From Octopus sinensis (taxonomy: Eukaryota), in the NCBI RefSeq assembly GCF_006345805.1, contig NC_043002.1, forward strand, positions 76,012,001-76,076,000: a DNA stretch of 64,000 nt, written 5' to 3'. Numbering within the stretch: the first letter of the stretch is position 1; each line of letters starts with the position of its first letter. The translations under genes and the position numbers were made by a program. The notes under the pieces are model-generated. The model made no database searches, had not been told where the DNA came from, and was given only the letters and a program-made list of their open reading frames with translations. Below are positions 41,864-60,165 of this stretch, piece after piece.

Positions 41864-42416
41864 TAATAATAATAATAATAATAATAGCTGCAACAATAAC
41901 AATAACTATATCTCTGCATATTTTGATAGTATTTTCTCCCACCATCTGACTTCCAACTAAATATTCCCTATTACTATATAGAATGACAGATCAACAATAG
42001 CAATCCTTCAAATGAAAATCTTGAATTTATGATTTAAAAAAATATTTCTTAAACTGAGACATAGATAGTTCATCTATCTTGACTTGAAAAGAAAATAATG
42101 TAAACAGCATTAAAAAAATATCCTGCTATACTGAGGTAAAAAATGGCAGAGATTTTCATATACTTTCATTATAGGTCCACTTATATTTTTGTCTTATTTT
42201 TTCTTGTTGCTTATTTTGTTTAGGTGAATTATCTCGTTATGTGTATATATATAAGTACCATGCATGTATATGTATATATGTTTATGTGTATCCGTATGTG
42301 TCTATGTATATTTATATCCATACCTACATGTGGGTATGTGTACATATATTTATGTGTATATGTATATACACATATACGCATATATAGAGAGGTGTATGTA
42401 TGTATGAGCTGTATGT

Positions 42417-42665
42417 TGATTTCTTAACTACCCACAAGGGGCTAAACACAGAGGGGACAAACAAGGACAGACAAAGGGATTAAGGCGATTACATCGACCC
42501 CAGTACGCAACTGGTACTTAATTTATCGACCCCGGGAGGATGAAAGGCAAAGTCGACCTCGGCGGAATTTGAACTCGGAACGTAACAACAGACGAAATAC
42601 GGTTACGCATTTCGCCCGACGTGCTAACGTTTCTGCCAGCTCGGCGCCTCTGCCAGCTCGGCGCC
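42417..42665 (-). mobile_element. SINE family A, tail 1, with 17-bp TSD and a 17-bp tandem duplication of its 5' end
   Basis: TSD ATGTATGAGCTGTATGT at 42400-42416 and 42666-42682. TCTGCCAGCTCGGCGCC occurs at 42632-42648 and 42649-42665. Confidence 0.9.
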
Positions 42666-43184
42666 ATGTATGAGCTGTATGTATACATATATATGTCATC
42701 ATATCTGTCTATTAGTGTATATATATATGTGTGTATACACATACATATATATATATGTATGTATTCACATACATATGTATAAGTATATATATGTGTGTGT
42801 GAGTCTGTGTATTGACAGATAGATAGCTAAATAGATATATACGTAGATATCTATTTACATCTTGCTTTTTATCTATCCATCTATCTTCCTGTATACACAT
42901 ATATACATATATATACACATATATACACACTCACACATACGTATATATTTTGAGTGTACATGTATACACATAGACACATACACGCACACTACACACAAAC
43001 TACACGCAATTACTACTTATAAAAACGTTTCATAAAGTAATGTTCTTTATTTGCTTGGCGTTTTTTTTTTTCATTTCTATTTTCACCCTTCTTTACTTAA
43101 TGGCAGAAAATAAAAAAAAATCTTCACAATCGACTACAGAGGCTTTTAACCAGTCACACTATTCGGAAAATTTTTCTTTCTTCT

Positions 43185-47805: not shown

Positions 47806-49149
47806 AAGGAAACTGTTGACAATGCATAGAATGCACCACCCTAAGGCAGATACAGAACGACTCTATCTGCCAAGAAAAGAGGGAGGCCGTGGTCTTTTGC
47901 AACTGGCAATAACAATGAAGATTGCTACAATTGGCCTAGACACCTACCTGAAAAACTCTGAGGACTGGATGCTAAAACTTGTCTCAAAACATGAAAACAA
48001 GAAAGCATCATACTCAGTCACAAAACAGGCAAAGGAATATCTAAGTGAATTCCGAATACAACCAATTTCGGAATTAGAGATAGATATACAAGAAACAAGC
48101 ACAGAAAAAGCTAGGCGCATGAAAACCCGTGCCAAAACTGCGGCCTTAGATATTCTGAATAATAAATGGCAAGAAAAACCTCTCTATGGCAAATAGCCAA
48201 AGAGAGCGAATAATGCAGATATCGACAAAGCCCTGACCCATCAATGGCTAATGGCCTCTGGCTTAAAATCTGAAACAGAGGGGTTTATCATAGCAGCTCA
48301 AGATCAATGCCTACCAACAAGAAACTACCAGGCCAACATATTAAAGATCAGAAGCAGTCCAACGTGTCGTGTATGCAAGCAACAAAATGAAACCATTGAC
48401 CATGTGGTCTCCAAGTGCAGTCTTCTAGCGCCCACAGAGTATCTCAACAGGCACGATAGAGCTGCACAATATATTCACTGGGTAATCTGTAAAAACCTGG
48501 ATTTGCCGCATGAAAAAAACTGGTGGGAACACAAACCACCCCCAGTGCTTGAAAATGACCACATCTCACTCCTCTGGAACTTCACCATTCAAACTGACAG
48601 GAAGATAGATGCAAATAGGCCAGACATCATATTGAAAAACTTCAAACAAAGAACATGCCTCCTCATTGATATGACTGTCCCAATCGATATAAACGTATCT
48701 GTCAAGACCTACCAAAAACTGAGCAAATATAAAGATCTTGAAATAGAAATCAGCAAAATGTGGAAGCTGAAGACTAAAACAATACCTGTTGTCATAGGTG
48801 CCCTGGGAATGATAGCAAAAGGGGCTGATAGCTACCTAACTCAGATACCAGGAAACCCAAAAATGGCAGAAGTTCAAAAGATAGTGCTCATGGGAACTGC
48901 TCATATCCTACGCAAAATACTCTCTATGTAATCTCAAGGTTTAAAACAAACATAATTTTCGGTTTAAAAAAAAAAAAAAAAAAAAATTTTTTTTTTTTTA
49001 GACATTCATTAGTACAACATCCCCACCCCCCAAATATATGGCACACTAGGCATAACAACAACATGAACTTCCAACCCTGTTGTCTCTTGAGGTCTCTGGG
49101 TGAGACTTGGAGCCAACTTGTACAAATATAAAGCAAAAGTCAAACATAG
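47806..49149 (+). mobile_element. 5'-truncated R4/Dong-like LINE (family Dong-A), young copy
   Basis: One reading frame runs 47816-48931, with a single internal stop at 48194-48196. Motifs are HHPKADTERLYLPRKEGGRGL, CCHC finger CRVC...DHVVSKC, RHD, RPDII..LID and KLSKY (RLE endonuclease). (TAA)n lies on both sides. Confidence 0.92.
48251..48931 (+). pseudogene. CCHC zinc finger + restriction-like endonuclease domain of an R4/Dong LINE ORF
   Basis: 226-aa ORF in the track with CX2CX7HX4C, RHD, PD..D and KxxKY motifs. The element is 5'-truncated and lacks the RT. Confidence 0.9.
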
Positions 49150-51034: not shown

Positions 51035-51350
51035 AATCCGTTCTATTATAGGCACAAGGCCTGAAAGTTTGGGGGAGGGGGACAGTCGATTCAACTGGTT
51101 ACTTAGTTCATCGACCCCGAAAGGATAAACGGCAAAGTCGACATCGGCGTAATTTGAACTCAGAACGTAGTGACAGACGAAATACCTATTTCATTACTAC
51201 CCACAAAGGGCTAAACACAGAGGGGACAAACAAGGACAGACACGCGGATTAAGTCGATTATATCGACCCCAGTGCGTAACTGGTCCTTAATTTATCGACC
51301 CCGAAAGGATGAAAGGCAAAGTCGACCTCGAGGGGATTTGAACTCAGAAC
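51035..51350 (-). mobile_element. Dimeric SINE family A (head lost in microsatellite)
   Basis: Two cores. The internal junction GACGAAATACC|TATTTC.TTACTACCC is the same as at 19602-19629. Confidence 0.85.
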
Positions 51351-51353
51351 GTG

Positions 51354-51933: not shown

Positions 51934-52289
51934 TGTATGTATATATATACAGACACAATGTATGCATATACAAGCAGACAGATAGATATATATTTAACTT
52001 CATGTTACGCACACTCGCCTTCTCACAGAAGCAAAACTTATATGATGGTCCGAGCACAAGAGCAAAAGGAATATTTAAGTAAAAATTCCAGGTGTGTCTT
52101 AGAACTGTTACTGAACTAATGGTAACAGGCCTTGCTAGACACTATTCATATCAGATGCTTACAGCCACGGTTGTATGGTTAAGAAGCCCTATTTGTAACC
52201 TTGTACCTTCAGTTTCAAACCCACTGTGGGCATCTTGGATAAGTGTCTTCTACAATAGCCTCAGGGCTAATCAATTATTTTGTAATCGA

Positions 52290-53192
52290 ATTTGATGGGC
52301 GAGAAAATTTTATGCTGGCGAGTTTAGCTTGGACGATGACAGTTGCAGTGGAAGACCTTCAAAATTGGATGATGTTTTGAAGACAAAAATCGAAGAAAAC
52401 TCAAATATCACGACTAGAGAACTTGTAGAGGAGTTGGAAGTTTCTAAAAGTACGGCTCATGAACACCTAGTGAAGCTATGATACATTTCTCGCTATAATG
52501 TATGGTTTCCTTACAAACTCTCAGAAAAGAATTGCTTGGACCAGTATTCTTTTTGTGATATGCTTTTGGAACGGAATGAAAACATATCCTTTTTGAATCA
52601 ACTTTGAGTGGGAATAAAAAAACTGGATTGTGTACGAAAACGTAATGCGAAAAAGATCCTGGAGGTTGCATAAGGATAACCCAAACAGAAACCAAAGACG
52701 AATATCCATGTCAAAAAAGCTATGTTTGGTGGGATCATAAAGGCATTATTTATTATGAGCTTCTGCCACAAAACCATACCATTAGTTCACCAAAACATCA
52801 TAGAATTGAGGCAGGATATTGCCAACAAGACAATCACGACCAGATGTGACTTTGGCTAGCCGAATAAAGTTAAAGGAACTTGACTAGGATCTCTATCCCC
52901 ATCGTCCATATTCTCCTGATATTGCGCCATCCGACTATCACTTGTTTTTGTCTCTACAGAACTCATTTCAAGGGAAAACATTTAACGATTGAAATGGAAT
53001 CACAATGCATCTAAACAAAGTTATCTGGATAACATTTTTTCTTCAAAACTTGTTAAATTTTATGCTGATGGAATATTGAAATTGTTTGATAAATTAATAA
53101 AAATGAAAATTATTTCATTGAATGTAATTTATTGAAAGGTCAATTATTTATATCCCCTTTGGCATATTAAAAAAAACGCCGTACAACTTAAT
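52290..53192 (+). mobile_element. Degraded mariner transposase relic (cecropia/Hsmar1-like)
   Basis: Frameshifted motifs DD.CSGRPS, W(F)PYKL (cf. WVPHEL), KNWIVYENVMRKRSW, D HKGIIYYELLP, HRPYSPDIAPSDYHLFLSLQN. Confidence 0.8.
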
Positions 53193-53269
53193 GTGTGTTT
53201 GTGTGTGTGTCTCTCGTGACCTACATACTGAGTGAGTCCACTGGCTGACCCACACGGTCTGCTACATAA

Positions 53270-54201
53270 GGTGTGTAATAGATCATGCTGGATATCACAC
53301 TGGTAGACGGGGGACGACTGCATGACCAGGCTTATGGCTGATTAGACCTGTCTTTGAGAAGGAGACACAACCGCACTGCTTACACGAAACTCTTCTGTAC
53401 CCATGTCAGCGAGAAAGTTCACATCATCCATATTTTTACAAGCACGTATCAACTCAATGTATACCACCCTATCATTCTTGAATTATTTAACTGCAGTAAC
53501 ACTCTGATTCCTCCACAGCTCTCCATCTCTGTTAGTGTTGATATTGATGTATCTTAAGATTGTCTTTGAAGTGCTTTCTTAGCTTGCACAGGAAATATTT
53601 TTCATGCTCCAGCTCACCATACAACACCTGTTTTGGCATTCGGTTGCGCTCTAAACAGACAAGCTGTCCATACACATTAAATTAGTGATTCATGATTATA
53701 GGGTCGATACTTGTCATTTTCGGTACATGAGATTGTCATGATATCTTAAGGATATTACGCAAGCATCGTTAGAGGAATCGCTCGAGACGTTTGATATCCC
53801 TGCGGTAGATTGTTCAGGTCTCGCATCCATGCAACAGCGTTGTTAAGATGCATACATGATGGACCTCAACTTCCGTTGCTGCTTTGATGTCCAATGCAAC
53901 TAGAGACTCGGTTCAATCTTTTCAAATGCGACACAGACCTTAGAAGTCTCTAATCGACCTCCTCGCCAAATATTTTAATTCTAGATTGTGCGCTACCAAG
54001 GTAGACAAAAGTATTCGCGACTTTCAACATTTTATCCTAGACGAATATCGATGGTAGGATACATGGCTTGCCTGGTGCTAGTTGTAGCATGACTACCATA
54101 TTCTTAAGACTGGTTGCAAGTCCAAACTCATCACACGTGGCAGCAGAGTAGTTCATCAGGAGCTGATTGCAGTCGTTAGCATAAAAGAGATCACGAATGA
54201 G
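53270..54201 (-). mobile_element. RTE (BovB-like) LINE, 3' part: RT motif to C-terminal zinc finger, degraded
   Basis: Minus strand reads LIRDLFYANDC (cf. IRELLFADDC), FVYLGS and terminal C.QCGC...GLISH. Confidence 0.7.
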
Positions 54202-54218
54202 AGTCTAGCCACAACTTA

Positions 54219-54447
54219 TTTCTTTAATGCCCACAAAGGGATAAACATATAGGGGACAAACAAGGACAGGCAAAGGGGTTAAGTCGATTACATCGACCCC
54301 AGTGCGTAACTGGTACTTAATTTATCGGTCCCGAAGGGATGAAAGTCAAAGTCGACCTCGGCGGAATTTGAACTCACAACGTAACGGCAGACGAAATACT
54401 GCTAAGCATTTCTCCCGGCATGCTAACGTTTCTGCCGGCTCGCCGCT
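54219..54447 (-). mobile_element. SINE family A, tail 1, fused downstream of U6
   Basis: Full head-core-tail similar to 425-655. Confidence 0.9.
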
Positions 54448-54455
54448 TTCTTTTT

Positions 54456-54558
54456 ATATGGAACGCTTCATGAATTTGCGTGTCATCCTTGCTCAGGGGC
54501 CATGCTAATCTTCTCTGTATCGTTCTAATTTTAGAATATGTACCACCGTAGCTAGTAC
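54456..54558 (-). pseudogene. U6: Full-length U6 snRNA retropseudogene
   Basis: The minus strand is colinear with human U6 as recalled from memory (93/103 identical, no gaps). ACAGAGA box and AGC triad are intact. There is no oligo-T terminator (AAAAAGAA follows) and no promoter context (upstream is LINE sequence). Confidence 0.93.
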
Positions 54559-54581
54559 CATCTTAGTCTAGCTGCATCTTA

Positions 54582-55088
54582 TCATACAAAAGAAAGTCAA
54601 TCTACTTCGTGAAGCTGCTATCGGTTCCGCAATTAAAACGCATTTCCTGCGGTGCAGCATTTAGCAGGGTTTTCTCAGAGTTCCTCTGAATATTTTATGA
54701 CACTACGGTCGCAACGTAACTCGAAACTATGCACGGCAGTGATTAGTATTTATGAGTCAACGTTTGTCTGTCTCCAAGATGAAAGAAGTAGCTTTAATGG
54801 GGATCTGGAAACAGTTCTGAGAAACGTTGACGAGAATAACAAACTTGTATTTCTGGGAGATATAAATACCTGTGTACGACGTGATTCTGAACTTTGGAGT
54901 AGCATAGGAAATCACGGAATGGAGAGTGTAACACGAATGAGCTATTCCTATTACAACTGTGTCAGGAGTTAGACATAGTCATAAGCAATAATTGGTTTAG
55001 GCAAAAGAATATATATAAGGCTATTTGGAAGCATCCAGCTTCAAGTCATTCGCATATACTCGATTATGTAATAGTCCGTAGAAAAGAG
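54582..55088 (+). mobile_element. RTE (BovB-like) APE endonuclease fragment, inverted relative to the RT part
   Basis: REAAIGSAIKTH (cf. REAGVGFAIK), FMTLR, KLVFLGDINTCV (cf. LIILGDFNARV), WKHP...LDYVIVRRK. Confidence 0.75.
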
Positions 55089-55535
55089 ATACATGTATAC
55101 ATACGCACATATATATATGCATATATTTACATACCTATTTATATATGTATTTCTATATATGCAAACGCGTATATACGTGTGTGTGTATCTGTATCTGTGT
55201 GTTTATAATTGTATATGTATATGCATATATGTGCACACACATATACACATGTATAATATATAATATGTATATGCATATGCGTATATGCAATCATGGTTGT
55301 GGTCGCATAATTTTTGTGCGCAAAATTTTCTTACACAATACATGCATACATCGTTATACAAAATCTATTTGCACATTTACATACATAAATGCATACATAT
55401 CCTTATACACATGTCTTGTTGTTATGAGTGTATTTACTTAATATATATAATAATAGATAGCTTATACTTACACATACATATATACACATACATATATACA
55501 TGCATATCTATATATATGTATGTACATGCATAATT

Positions 55536-55571
<36 letters not shown>

Positions 55572-56596
55572 GCACACACATATATATGCGTGTGTACATA
55601 TTCCACATACACCCTCGTACTCATACAAACATTCACAAGCTTACAATGTTGACGAATTGCTATCTATTTCATCATATATCGGGGCCATTCTACCGAAACC
55701 TATTGAGTATATACAATTATTTTATATTGCTCTCTTTTTTACTTTTCTGTATTTTTTTGTCATTGATTCCATCAATATAATCTATACCTTATTCATAACA
55801 CAATATCAGATCTCACATGCAATTGTAATCCATAGAGCCAGTGATGGCGAAGGTGGTGAAGGTGATTGAGGTGGCATCGGTGGTGGTGGTGGTGGTGGTA
55901 GTGGTGGTGGCAGTAGCGCTGTTGATGTTCCTGGCAGGGTATCTGTTGGTGTATATATGTGTGTGTGTGTGTGAGTATATGTCAGTGGGAGTGTGTGGAG
56001 CGGGGTGGGGGTGGGGGAAGAAAACATGTTATCAACTTGACAATAGACCCGAATATTGAGAAAGAATACAGAACAAAGAAAAACAAATAATAATAATAAT
56101 AATAATAATAAACAGACAGAAATACATAAAGACACAACCAGTCATACTTACATATAAGAACGCGCAGACTAGTATATACTTACATACTCATGTACACGCG
56201 CTTGTACATACATAATATCACTCATATCGCATACAGATATTGTCACTACAACATACGAAGCAACAAAAAATTAAATGTATTGTTGGAAAAGTTATATTCA
56301 TATTCACGTACACACACACACACACTCACACACACACACGCACACACACACACACACCACTTAGGGCCTTTTGTTCATTATATGTGTGTGTGTAGTTCTA
56401 TATAGGCCTCTGTATGTCTGTGTGTGTGTGTTTGTGTGTACGTGCGCACAATAAGAGCAAGTGCACGCAATACAGGTTTTAGAGTATAATCGTCCATTTT
56501 GACCATAAACTACACAGAAACTCATATATGCACCCAGGCGCACGGACACACACACACACATAAAAAAATATATATATATCTTTGTATGTATGTATG

Positions 56597-59964: not shown

Positions 59965-60165
59965 AATCCTTTCTATTAAGGACACAAGGCCTAGAATTTG
60001 AGGGGAAGGGGATAGGCAATCGCATCGACCCCAACGCGTAACTGGTACTTAATTCATCGACCTCGAAATGATGAAAGACAAAGTAGACCTCGCCGGAAGC
60101 GGCTGGCGAAATAGCGCTAAGCGTTTTGCGCGGTGTGCTAACGATTCTACAAGCTCGCCACCTTA
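59965..60165 (-). mobile_element. SINE family A, tail 2 with (ATT)n tail and internal deletion
   Basis: Core and head motifs. The tail AGAAAGGATTATTATT continues into (AAT)n on +. Confidence 0.8.

What the first reader, a model, noticed from the sequence alone, without database searches (positions are those of the whole stretch)
54202..54581. U6 snRNA-SINE chimeric retrocopy enclosed by a single 17-bp TSD
On the minus strand, full-length U6 (54558-54456) is followed by AAAAAGAA and then a complete family A SINE (54447-54219). AGTCTAGCCACAACTTA (54202-54218) and AGTCTAGCTGCATCTTA (54565-54581) match at 14/17, and the CA/TG difference fits decay of one CpG. The length equals the TSDs of two plain copies of this SINE. 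Six extra nt (CATCTT) repeat part of the TSD. U6/L1 chimeras are established in mammals (template switching or RNA ligation at U6's oligo-U end). A U6/SINE chimera with an oligo-A rather than oligo-U junction in a mollusc suggests a parallel route, perhaps via oligoadenylated U6.
Basis: partly seen in the sequence, partly recalled or inferred. Interest (0 to 1): 0.8.

Follow-up and report, generated by a model that had tools for sequence, protein, structure and literature searches.

The report
U6–SINE chimeric retrocopy in octopus DNA
A dead copy of the U6 spliceosomal RNA is fused head-to-tail to a complete SINE and bracketed by one 17-bp target-site duplication, most likely one reverse-transcription event; this kind is known in birds and mammals, and I found no report of it in molluscs.

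Summary
Rfam finds one full-length U6 (54558-54452, minus strand, 97.6 bits). It lacks its U-tract; AAAAAGAA and a complete copy of a real SINE family (54447-54219) follow. A 17-mer repeat (14/17) brackets the unit (p about 0.003 to 0.0003). Nothing brackets U6 or the SINE alone. Plain copies of the SINE family have 16-17-bp TSDs.

The best reading is one target-primed reverse transcription event. The enzyme copied a whole SINE RNA, jumped from its 5' end onto an A-tailed, U-less U6 RNA, and the composite integrated.

- The unit sits exactly where two head-to-head fragments of one LINE type meet (RT part on the minus strand, endonuclease part on the plus strand). A more complex single event involving that LINE cannot be excluded.
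- The last AA of the junction may belong to the SINE, because most SINE heads in the window are preceded by AA.
- U6/Alu chimeras, and U6 chimeras made by L2 and RTE LINEs, are already described.

No octopus genome could be reached, so recurrence, the empty site and the source U6 gene are untested. Verdict: a new member of a known kind, one locus, moderate interest.

The parts
54565..54581 (-). 5' copy of the 17-bp target-site duplication (TAAGATGCAGCTAGACT)
   Evidence: 14/17 match to the 3' copy; these are the only two matches in the window at 3 or fewer mismatches.
54559..54564 (-). 6-nt filler AAGATG between the TSD and the U6 5' end; identical to positions 2-7 of the adjacent TSD copy
   Evidence: sequence. 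Reading it as a templated insertion made during 5' junction repair is inference.
54456..54558 (-). Full-length U6 snRNA retrocopy (G1 to CCATAT) with no U-tract
   Evidence: (RF00026, 97.6 bits). The ACAGAGA box and AGC triad are intact in the sequence. The 5' stem-loop still folds, with an A3-U17 pair.
54448..54455 (-). A-rich junction AAAAAGAA. The last AA (54449..54448) may be the SINE's own 5' leader or microhomology
54219..54447 (-). Complete SINE copy with the A-type tail ...TTAAAGAAA; about 10% diverged from a consensus built from window copies
54202..54218 (-). 3' copy of the 17-bp target-site duplication (TAAGTTGTGGCTAGACT). Its last 3-4 nt (GACT) already belong to the LINE RT fragment
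53225..54204 (-). 5'-truncated LINE fragment in the same orientation as U6-SINE. It covers the C-terminal half of the RT onward (residues 765-998 of relative P0006; profile positions 175-483). This is context, not part of the chimera in the best model
   Evidence: E 7e-29 and 7e-28; E 9e-32; 67% DNA identity to paralog L001, window 54165..53225.
54608..55094 (+). Inverted LINE fragment covering the endonuclease domain (residues about 88-261 of P0006), on the opposite strand. Its 5'-most end points at the U6-SINE unit
   Evidence: E 4e-20 for 54652-55094; REAAIGSAIKT against REAGVGFAIRT, extending the match to 54608. One search shows P0006 has APE-type endonuclease and RVT_1 domains.

Best explanation
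One target-primed reverse transcription event made the U6-SINE unit. It was carried out by the LINE that mobilises this SINE family.

Proposed steps:
1. The endonuclease nicked the target, and the reverse transcriptase started on the 3' tail (...AAAGAAAU) of a SINE RNA.
2. It copied the SINE to its very 5' end.
3. It then jumped onto the 3' end of a U6 snRNA that had lost its U-tract and carried a short A-rich tail. The A's shared with the SINE 5' end probably guided the jump.
4. It copied U6 to its first nucleotide.
5. The composite cDNA was joined to the upstream DNA with a 6-nt filler templated from the target. The 17-bp stagger between the two nicks became the TSD.

The target was the junction between two older, head-to-head fragments of another LINE. 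The product is a dead retrocopy: the U6 part has no external promoter and no terminator.

Shown: the parts, their order and orientation, the single enclosing repeat, the typical TSD length, and the LINE context.
Inferred: the template jump, the A-tailed U6 acceptor, and the order of events relative to the LINE.
For: - U6 is full-length and the SINE is complete. Both lie on the same strand, with U6 at the 5' side as in all known U6 chimeras.
- One 17-mer repeat (14/17) encloses both, at p 0.003-0.00025.
- There is no repeat around the SINE alone, U6 alone, or U6 plus the A-run.
- The repeat length matches the exact 17-bp TSDs of two plain copies and the 16-bp TSD of a third.
- The SINE 3' junction looks like those of plain copies: tail intact, with a TA overlap with the TSD.
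- The SINE part reaches its first nucleotides. That fits run-off at an RNA 5' end followed by a jump. It does not fit ligation to a cleaved 5'-OH fragment (compare PMC6789731).
- This system shows template jumping at the 5' end elsewhere. Plain copy 42647-42420 carries a 17-nt re-copy of its own head between the TSD and the SINE.
- The ages of the parts agree. The SINE is about 10% from consensus. U6 differs at 10/103 positions from human U6 (my count from the sequence). The two TSD copies differ at 3/17.
- The literature has precedents: U6/Alu and U6atac/Alu chimeras, U6 chimeras made by stringent L2 and RTE LINEs, and polyadenylated 3'-truncated U6 pseudogenes (PMC4476161).
Against: - This is a single locus, with no orthologous empty site and no second example.
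- The 17-mer overlaps the junction of two head-to-head LINE fragments. In this model that is a coincidence of a few percent.
- The canonical U6 oligo-U tract is absent, so the A-tailed U6 acceptor is assumed, not seen.
- The TSD copies differ at 3 of 17 positions, and the 5' junction needs a 6-nt filler.
- The SINE's partner LINE is not identified.
Confidence: 0.55

Rival explanations
1. One complex event together with the LINE. While a 5'-inverted ('twin-primed') LINE insertion was being resolved, the growing first-strand cDNA left the LINE RNA at RT residue about 765. It annealed briefly to the end of the inverted cDNA, switched to a SINE RNA and then to U6 RNA, and re-annealed to the same cDNA end. 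On this view the 17-mer repeat and the extra AAGATG are repeated copies of that cDNA end, not a TSD. The whole structure is a tripartite U6-SINE-LINE chimera with an inverted 5' segment.
For: - The LINE RT fragment has the same orientation as U6-SINE and starts at the last 3-4 nt of the 3' repeat copy.
- An endonuclease fragment of the same LINE type lies inverted on the other side. Its 5'-most end faces inward, as twin priming predicts.
- There are effectively two and a half copies of the 17-mer (X, X', and AAGATG).
- Tripartite chimeras and twin-primed snRNA/L1 chimeras are known (PMC4476161; PMC2104539).
Against: - The repeat is exactly the family's usual TSD length (17, 17 and 16 bp). That would be a coincidence in this model.
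- The SINE 3' junction looks like an ordinary priming site.
- The model needs the polymerase to copy 13 nt of DNA template, leave it, and return to the same spot.
- The inverted and sense LINE segments are about 1.5 kb apart in LINE coordinates, which is unusual for twin priming.
- No TSD for the LINE could be found.
- The LINE's reachable 3' region shows no similarity to the SINE tail, so it is probably not the SINE's partner.
- The RT fragment carries more stop codons than about 10% divergence would predict (6 in about 235 codons, my count). This hints weakly that it is older.
Confidence: 0.13
2. Two independent insertions that happen to abut. Either a U6 pseudogene with an A-tail came first and a SINE then landed at its tail, or the SINE came first and U6 landed exactly at its 5' end.
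For: - U6 pseudogenes ending in an A-rich tract and flanked by TSDs are a known class (PMC4476161).
- A-rich tails can attract insertions.
- SINEs in this window often sit in head-to-tail arrays.
Against: - There is no second TSD. Nothing brackets the SINE alone, U6 alone, or U6 plus the A-run, whereas plain SINE copies keep clean 16-17-bp TSDs.
- Only one AAAGAAA lies at the SINE 3' end, so an A-rich TSD cannot be hiding there without truncating the SINE tail.
- The outer repeat abuts the SINE 3' end exactly.
Confidence: 0.1
3. A pre-formed U6-SINE RNA was retrotransposed as a unit. Either (a) it was a read-through transcript from a true U6 gene whose terminator had been displaced by a SINE inserted just downstream, which could act as a master for a composite family; or (b) U6 was ligated to SINE RNA by an RtcB-type ligase before reverse transcription.
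For: - Both routes give one TSD around two complete parts.
- RtcB joins U6 to other cellular RNAs in human cells (PMC6789731).
- SINEs with snRNA-derived heads exist (Kojima 2015, cited).
Against: - (a) The retrocopy has no U6 3' fragment or T-run after the SINE, and AAAAAG is unexplained. Only one copy lies in 64 kb.
- (b) Canonical ligation products keep the U6 oligo-T tract and join it to cleaved 5'-OH RNAs. Here the U-tract is missing and the SINE is complete to its 5' end, so it is presumably a 5'-triphosphate primary transcript.
Confidence: 0.1

Closest known systems
Group IV snRNA pseudogenes: U6 chimeras with non-LTR retrotransposons (U6/L1; rare U6/Alu and U6atac/Alu; U6 with L2 or RTE LINEs). 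Buzdin 2002/2003, Garcia-Perez 2007, Doucet 2015 (PMC4476161)
   Same: Full-length U6 at the 5' side, in the same orientation as a retrotransposon part that keeps its 3' end. One TSD encloses both and none lies between them. It is made by a LINE machinery. A stringent, non-poly(A) type of partner is inferred here, because the SINE has no poly(A) tail. Stringent L2 and RTE LINEs form their U6 pseudogenes only as template-switching chimeras.
   Different: The junction is A-rich (AAAAAG[AA]) and the U6 oligo-U tract is missing. The 3' partner is a complete SINE, not a variably 5'-truncated LINE. The host is a cephalopod. A 6-nt templated filler lies at the 5' junction.
Group II/III snRNA pseudogenes: polyadenylated, sometimes 3'-truncated U6 copies flanked by TSDs (Doucet 2015)
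   Same: U6 is followed directly by an A-rich stretch instead of its U-tract. That fits a U6 RNA tailed by the nuclear surveillance machinery before it was reverse transcribed.
   Different: Here the A-stretch is only 6-9 nt and leads into a SINE, not into the 3' TSD. The A-tailed U6 would have been the acceptor of a template jump, not the RNA on which priming started.
[quoted passage not shown]
   Same: The end product is a U6-retrotransposon fusion inside one TSD.
   Different: That route predicts a retained oligo-T tract and a partner cut to a 5'-OH. Neither is seen here.
Twin priming (5'-inverted L1 insertions; Ostertag and Kazazian 2001) and tripartite chimeras (Gogvadze 2007, PMC2104539)
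   Same: The flanks are two segments of one LINE type in opposite orientation. The 5'-most end of the inverted segment abuts the sense segment. Three RNA-derived parts (U6, SINE, LINE) lie in the same orientation.
   Different: About 1.5 kb of LINE is missing between the two segments. No LINE TSD was found. A 17-mer direct repeat of typical SINE-TSD length separates U6-SINE from the LINE parts.

Membership tests
U6 spliceosomal RNA (Rfam RF00026) | Covariance-model score above the gathering threshold over the full model | tested here: met
   97.6 bits against 44, model positions 1-105, no truncation.
U6 spliceosomal RNA (Rfam RF00026) | Functional gene features: a 3' oligo-T terminator and an external upstream promoter | tested here: not met
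   AAAA replaces the terminal UUUU and there is no T-run within 40 nt. The upstream sequence is the TSD copy followed by antisense LINE endonuclease sequence. It is a retrocopy, not a gene.
U6 chimeric retropseudogene (Group IV, Doucet 2015) | Full-length U6 at the 5' side, in the same orientation as a retrotransposon part with an intact 3' end | tested here: met
U6 chimeric retropseudogene (Group IV, Doucet 2015) | A single TSD encloses both parts, with no TSD between them | tested here: met
   14/17 repeat, p 0.003-0.00025, and no internal or alternative repeat.
U6 chimeric retropseudogene (Group IV, Doucet 2015) | U6 ends in its oligo-T tract, fused directly to the partner | tested here: not met
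   CCATAT is followed by AAAAAGAA.
U6 chimeric retropseudogene (Group IV, Doucet 2015) | Both parts arrive together when compared with an orthologous empty site | not testable with these tools
   No cephalopod assembly could be reached.
tRNA-derived SINE | Short, multi-copy, flanked by TSDs, with subfamilies that share a head and body but differ in tail | tested here: met
tRNA-derived SINE | tRNA-related head with A and B boxes | tested here: inconclusive
   ARAGORN finds no tRNA-like gene, and Rfam in E-value mode gives no tRNA match at the locus. By eye, GAGTTCAAATTCC resembles a B box. That is my own reading, not a test.
Twin-primed (5'-inverted) LINE insertion | Two segments of one LINE in opposite orientation, with the 5'-most end of the inverted segment next to the sense segment | tested here: met
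   endonuclease residues about 88-261 on the plus strand and RT residues 765-998 on the minus strand, with their inner ends within 44 nt of each other once U6-SINE is removed.
Twin-primed (5'-inverted) LINE insertion | The two segments are nearly contiguous in LINE coordinates, and one TSD flanks the whole | tested here: inconclusive
   About 500 residues lie between the two segments. No TSD was found, and the outer end runs into microsatellites.

The most novel reading that the evidence does not exclude
U6 and SINE cDNAs were captured in the same event that made the flanking 5'-inverted LINE insertion. That would be a tripartite U6-SINE-LINE chimera formed during twin-priming resolution, with repeated re-annealing to one cDNA end producing the 17-mer repeat. 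A second possibility is that octopods have a recurrent route in which surveillance-tailed (oligoadenylated, U-less) U6 is the preferred acceptor for template jumps by a stringent LINE, giving a whole class of U6-SINE copies.
Probability: 0.15. Interest if true: 0.6.

Novelty: new member of a known kind. Interest (0 to 1): 0.35.

Why it matters
If confirmed genome-wide, this would extend U6 chimeric retrocopies from vertebrates and fungi to a lophotrochozoan, and to a SINE/LINE pair without poly(A) tails. That would support template jumping as an ancient, general property of non-LTR reverse transcriptases.

The U-less, A-tailed junction would be a genomic trace of U6 3'-end surveillance intermediates serving as templates. 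U6 retrocopies could then be used, as in mammals, to date LINE activity in the repeat-rich octopus genomes.

As it stands, this is one decayed, non-functional locus.

Tried and rejected
1. 'Inserted into a continuous LINE ORF'. My first reading of the flank translations suggested this, together with an empty-site test based on the constant 14-residue spacing in relatives. I rejected it. A profile HMM finds no LINE signal on the minus strand upstream, and tblastn places the upstream LINE piece on the opposite strand.
2. A third copy of the 17-mer after the LINE 3' end, which would show re-use of one nick site. None exists at 3 or fewer mismatches. TAAGTTGT at 53190..53183 matches 8/8, but it probably lies in the LINE ORF (L-S-C against L-T-C, same C-x6-C spacing as paralog L001).
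3. A TSD for the LINE itself. None was found.
4. Reaching octopus DNA or other U6-SINE junctions:
   - A protein search with the stitched pseudogene found nothing. I set the E-value cut-off at 1e-5, which was stricter than needed.
   - A search with the ORF that reads across the SINE/U6 junction found nothing.
   - Exact look-ups of window ORF 48251-48931 and of the Octopus bimaculoides hit found no contig.
   - Metagenome scans for the junction pattern and for the SINE core were both empty, so that collection holds no cephalopod DNA and the negative result is uninformative.
5. The two LINE paralogs I could fetch (L001 from a Tara metagenome, L002 from Logan) are only about 67% identical. They carry no SINE or U6 and do not align across the junction.
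6. Pfam on the decayed window fragments gave no hits. ARAGORN found no tRNA-like genes. A full-text search for SINE sequence strings found no papers.
7. Sub-threshold miRNA matches at 55084-55601 are microsatellite artefacts.

Full report
**1. What is there**

All features below are on the minus strand. Rfam finds one U6 snRNA in the whole 64-kb window, at 54558..54452 (97.6 bits against a gathering score of 44, full model, repeated). The copy runs from G1 to ...GTTCCATAT. The four terminal U positions of the model are AAAA in the window, and there is no T-run downstream. The ACAGAGA box and the AGC triad are intact.

The copy differs from human U6 (my recollection of the reference) at 10 of 103 positions. 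Six of the ten lie in the 5' stem-loop and keep it paired: A3-U17 replaces G3-C17, there are two G·U pairs, and the loop is UACG instead of UUCG. Rfam flags no non-canonical pair, and the hairpin folds at -6.5 kcal/mol against -9.5 for the human one. These changes may therefore come from the octopus source gene and not from decay, but I could not check this.

After CCATAT comes AAAAAGAA (54455..54448), then a complete SINE (54447..54219). The SINE family is real. It has about 28 blastn matches in the window and three other full-length copies at 86-89% identity. There are at least two tail types on a shared head and body. The chimera's SINE keeps the family's 3' end (...TTAAAGAAA) and its 5' end. 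It is about 10% diverged from a rough consensus built from window copies.

**2. The enclosing repeat**

TAAGATGCAGCTAGACT (54581..54565) and TAAGTTGTGGCTAGACT (54218..54202) match at 14 of 17 positions. They are the only two matches to the inferred ancestor in the window at 3 or fewer mismatches. The 3' copy abuts the SINE tail directly. The 5' copy is separated from U6 G1 by AAGATG, which repeats positions 2-7 of the 17-mer.

I applied a scan that allows 8 nt of slack on each side to 8000 random pairs of non-repetitive positions at the same spacing. It reaches the observed score in 0.3% of cases. Shuffling the downstream flank reaches it in 0.025%. The window's many microsatellites inflate a naive null to 1.9%. 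The same scan finds no repeat around the SINE alone, U6 alone, or U6 plus the A-run.

Plain copies of the SINE have exact TSDs: 17 bp (654-427), 17 bp (42647-42420) and, for a copy with the other tail, 16 bp (20352-20524).

**3.

I first read the flanks as one decayed LINE reverse-transcriptase ORF split by the insertion. That was wrong. An exhaustive HMMER search with the downstream flank found 204 LINE-type relatives. A profile built from the 37 longer ones maps the downstream flank to profile positions 175-483 (E 7e-29 and 7e-28). The match starts at the codon ACT, which is the last three bases of the 3' repeat copy. The profile finds nothing significant on the minus strand upstream.

tblastn with the full-length relative P0006 then placed residues 765-998 on the minus strand (54201..53553, E 9e-32). 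It placed residues 114-261 on the plus strand (54652..55094, E 4e-20). P0006 carries an APE-type endonuclease at 35-281 and RVT_1 at 574-844. The plus-strand match extends by eye to 54608 (REAAIGSAIKT against REAGVGFAIRT).

So U6-SINE sits exactly where the 5' ends of two head-to-head fragments of one LINE type meet. This arrangement, in which an internal piece lies inverted with its 5'-most end next to the sense piece, is what twin priming produces. However, about 1.5 kb of LINE is missing between the two pieces. I also found no TSD for the LINE, because its outer end runs into microsatellites. The LINE's 3' end must lie between about 53160 and 53035, since a mariner-like remnant begins below that.

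**4. How it most likely arose**

The simplest account is an ordinary insertion of a chimeric cDNA into that pre-existing junction:
- The SINE's partner LINE nicked the target and primed on the SINE RNA tail.
- It copied the SINE to its 5' end.
- It jumped to the 3' end of a U6 RNA and copied that to G1.
- The cDNA was then joined upstream, with six bases re-copied from the target.

Support for this account:
- There is a single repeat of the family's normal TSD length and no internal repeat.
- U6 lies on the 5' side in the same orientation as the SINE, as in every described U6 chimera (PMC4476161).
- The SINE is complete to its 5' end. That fits run-off and an end-to-end jump. RtcB-type ligation instead joins U6 to cleaved 5'-OH fragments and keeps the oligo-T tract (PMC6789731).
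- A plain copy in the window (42647-42420) carries a 17-nt re-copy of its own head between the TSD and the SINE. This shows that the enzyme does jump at template 5' ends.
- The ages of the parts are compatible: the SINE is about 10% diverged, U6 differs at 10/103 or fewer, and the TSD copies differ at 3/17 (and sequence).

**5. The A-rich junction**

About 11 of 16 SINE heads in the window are directly preceded by AA, whatever lies upstream. In one copy the A's lie inside the TSD, and in another they lie outside it. The AA may therefore be a 5' leader of the SINE RNA or a preferred microhomology.

Either way, the last AA of AAAAAGAA probably belongs with the SINE, and the true extra sequence is about AAAAAG. 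Sense-strand A's would require T's to be added to the cDNA, which would be unusual for untemplated addition. A templated origin from an A-rich RNA 3' end is therefore more likely.

A U6 that had lost its U-tract and gained a short A-rich tail is the kind of surveillance intermediate proposed as the template for human polyadenylated and 3'-truncated snRNA pseudogenes (PMC4476161). The shared A's would help the cDNA end pair with it. This step is inference.

An alternative I cannot exclude is that AAAGAAA is a few bases copied from the tail of a second SINE or LINE RNA, because the family's tail is ...TAAAGAAAT.

**6. Rivals**

- *One complex event with the LINE.* This would explain why the unit sits exactly at the LINE junction and why the 17-mer is present in two and a half copies. 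It makes the 17-bp length a coincidence, and it needs an awkward leave-and-return on a DNA template. The LINE's reachable 3' region shows no similarity to the SINE tail. I give this about 0.13.
- *Two independent insertions.* This lacks the second TSD it requires. About 0.1.
- *A pre-formed U6-SINE RNA (read-through or ligation).* This fits the missing U-tract and the complete SINE 5' end poorly. About 0.1.

In the best model (0.55), landing on the LINE junction is a coincidence of a few percent in this repeat-dense DNA.

**7. Origin and limits**

The intact TE ORF at 48251-48931 has its best match (77% identity) to an Octopus bimaculoides protein. All other hits are 63% or lower and come from other phyla. 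This supports an octopod source for the window.

No cephalopod assembly was reachable by any route. The checks that would decide the matter could therefore not be run: other U6 loci, the orthologous empty site, the source U6 gene, and junction reads in RNA.

**8. Comparison with what is known, and verdict**

Doucet et al. (PMC4476161) already define a class of snRNA pseudogenes fused to a SINE or a LINE. They cite U6/Alu chimeras and describe a U6atac/Alu chimera with a 14-bp TSD. They show that L2 and RTE LINEs make U6 chimeras by template switching from birds to mammals. Tripartite chimeras are known in human, mouse and Magnaporthe.

I found no report from molluscs. Two features here differ from the canonical case: the A-rich, U-less junction and the complete SINE partner.

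This is a new member of a known kind, seen once, in a decayed and non-functional state. Interest is moderate (0.35). It would rise if a genome survey showed that the A-tailed route is recurrent, or if the locus proved to be a single U6-SINE-LINE event.

Noticed in passing
window 53225-54204 (-) and 54608-55094 (+): Two fragments of the same type of APE/RVT LINE lie head-to-head: RT residues 765-998 on the minus strand and endonuclease residues about 88-261 on the plus strand. This looks like a 5'-inverted (twin-primed) insertion with about 1.5 kb missing between the two pieces. The U6-SINE unit sits exactly at their junction.
   Followed up: yes
window 42400-42682 (-): Plain SINE copy with an exact 17-bp TSD (ACATACAGCTCATACAT). 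It carries a 17-nt re-copy of its own head (GGCGCCGAGCTGGCAGA) between the 5' TSD and the SINE, which is a footprint of a template jump at the RNA 5' end.
   Followed up: partly
window 19486-19843 (-) and 51093-51352 (-): The same composite appears twice: an A-tail SINE, then TAG, then a SINE that starts at position 49 and has the other (B-type) tail. This may be a dimeric SINE subfamily or a duplicated segment.
   Followed up: no
window 23862-24979, 16440-16923, 19486-20524: SINE copies stand in head-to-tail arrays, separated only by tails and short spacers. This suggests repeated insertion at or next to earlier copies.
   Followed up: no
5' flanks of SINE heads across the window (e.g. 656-657, 16522-16523, 20349-20350, 24029-24030, 60163-60164): About 11 of 16 SINE heads are directly preceded by AA. 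In copy 20352-20524 the AA lies outside the 16-bp TSD, and in copy 654-427 it lies inside the 17-bp TSD. The AA is either a 5' leader of the SINE RNA or a joining preference.
   Followed up: partly
window 53183-53190 (-): TAAGTTGT follows a (CA)n run and matches the first 8 nt of the 3' copy of the 17-mer exactly. It probably lies within the LINE ORF (L-S-C against L-T-C in paralog L001, with the same C-x6-C spacing). A short LINE TSD is not excluded.
   Followed up: partly
window 54540-54558 (-), U6 5' stem-loop: All six differences from human U6 in the 5' stem-loop keep it paired: A3-U17 is compensatory, there are two G·U pairs, and the loop is UACG. They may reflect the octopus source gene and not decay.
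   Followed up: partly
window 52200-53000 (+): Decayed mariner-type transposase remnant. Frame translations show ...PYSPDIAPSDYHLFLSLQN..., the conserved mariner motif. I recognised this from my own knowledge and did not run a profile search.
   Followed up: no
window 47816-48931 (+): Two adjacent open ORFs (126 and 226 aa) from the C-terminal part of another LINE. The best hit of the 226-aa ORF is Octopus bimaculoides A0A0L8FXY1 at 77% identity, with hundreds of relatives at 52-63% in cnidarians and echinoderms. Some hits carry PF13966 (named 'reverse transcriptase zinc-binding' by some source records).
   Followed up: partly
window 55084-55601: A microsatellite-rich (TA/CA) stretch gives many sub-threshold Rfam microRNA matches (mir-297, mir-3149, mir-466 and others). 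These are composition artefacts. The same kind of repeats inflates naive TSD statistics in this window.
   Followed up: yes
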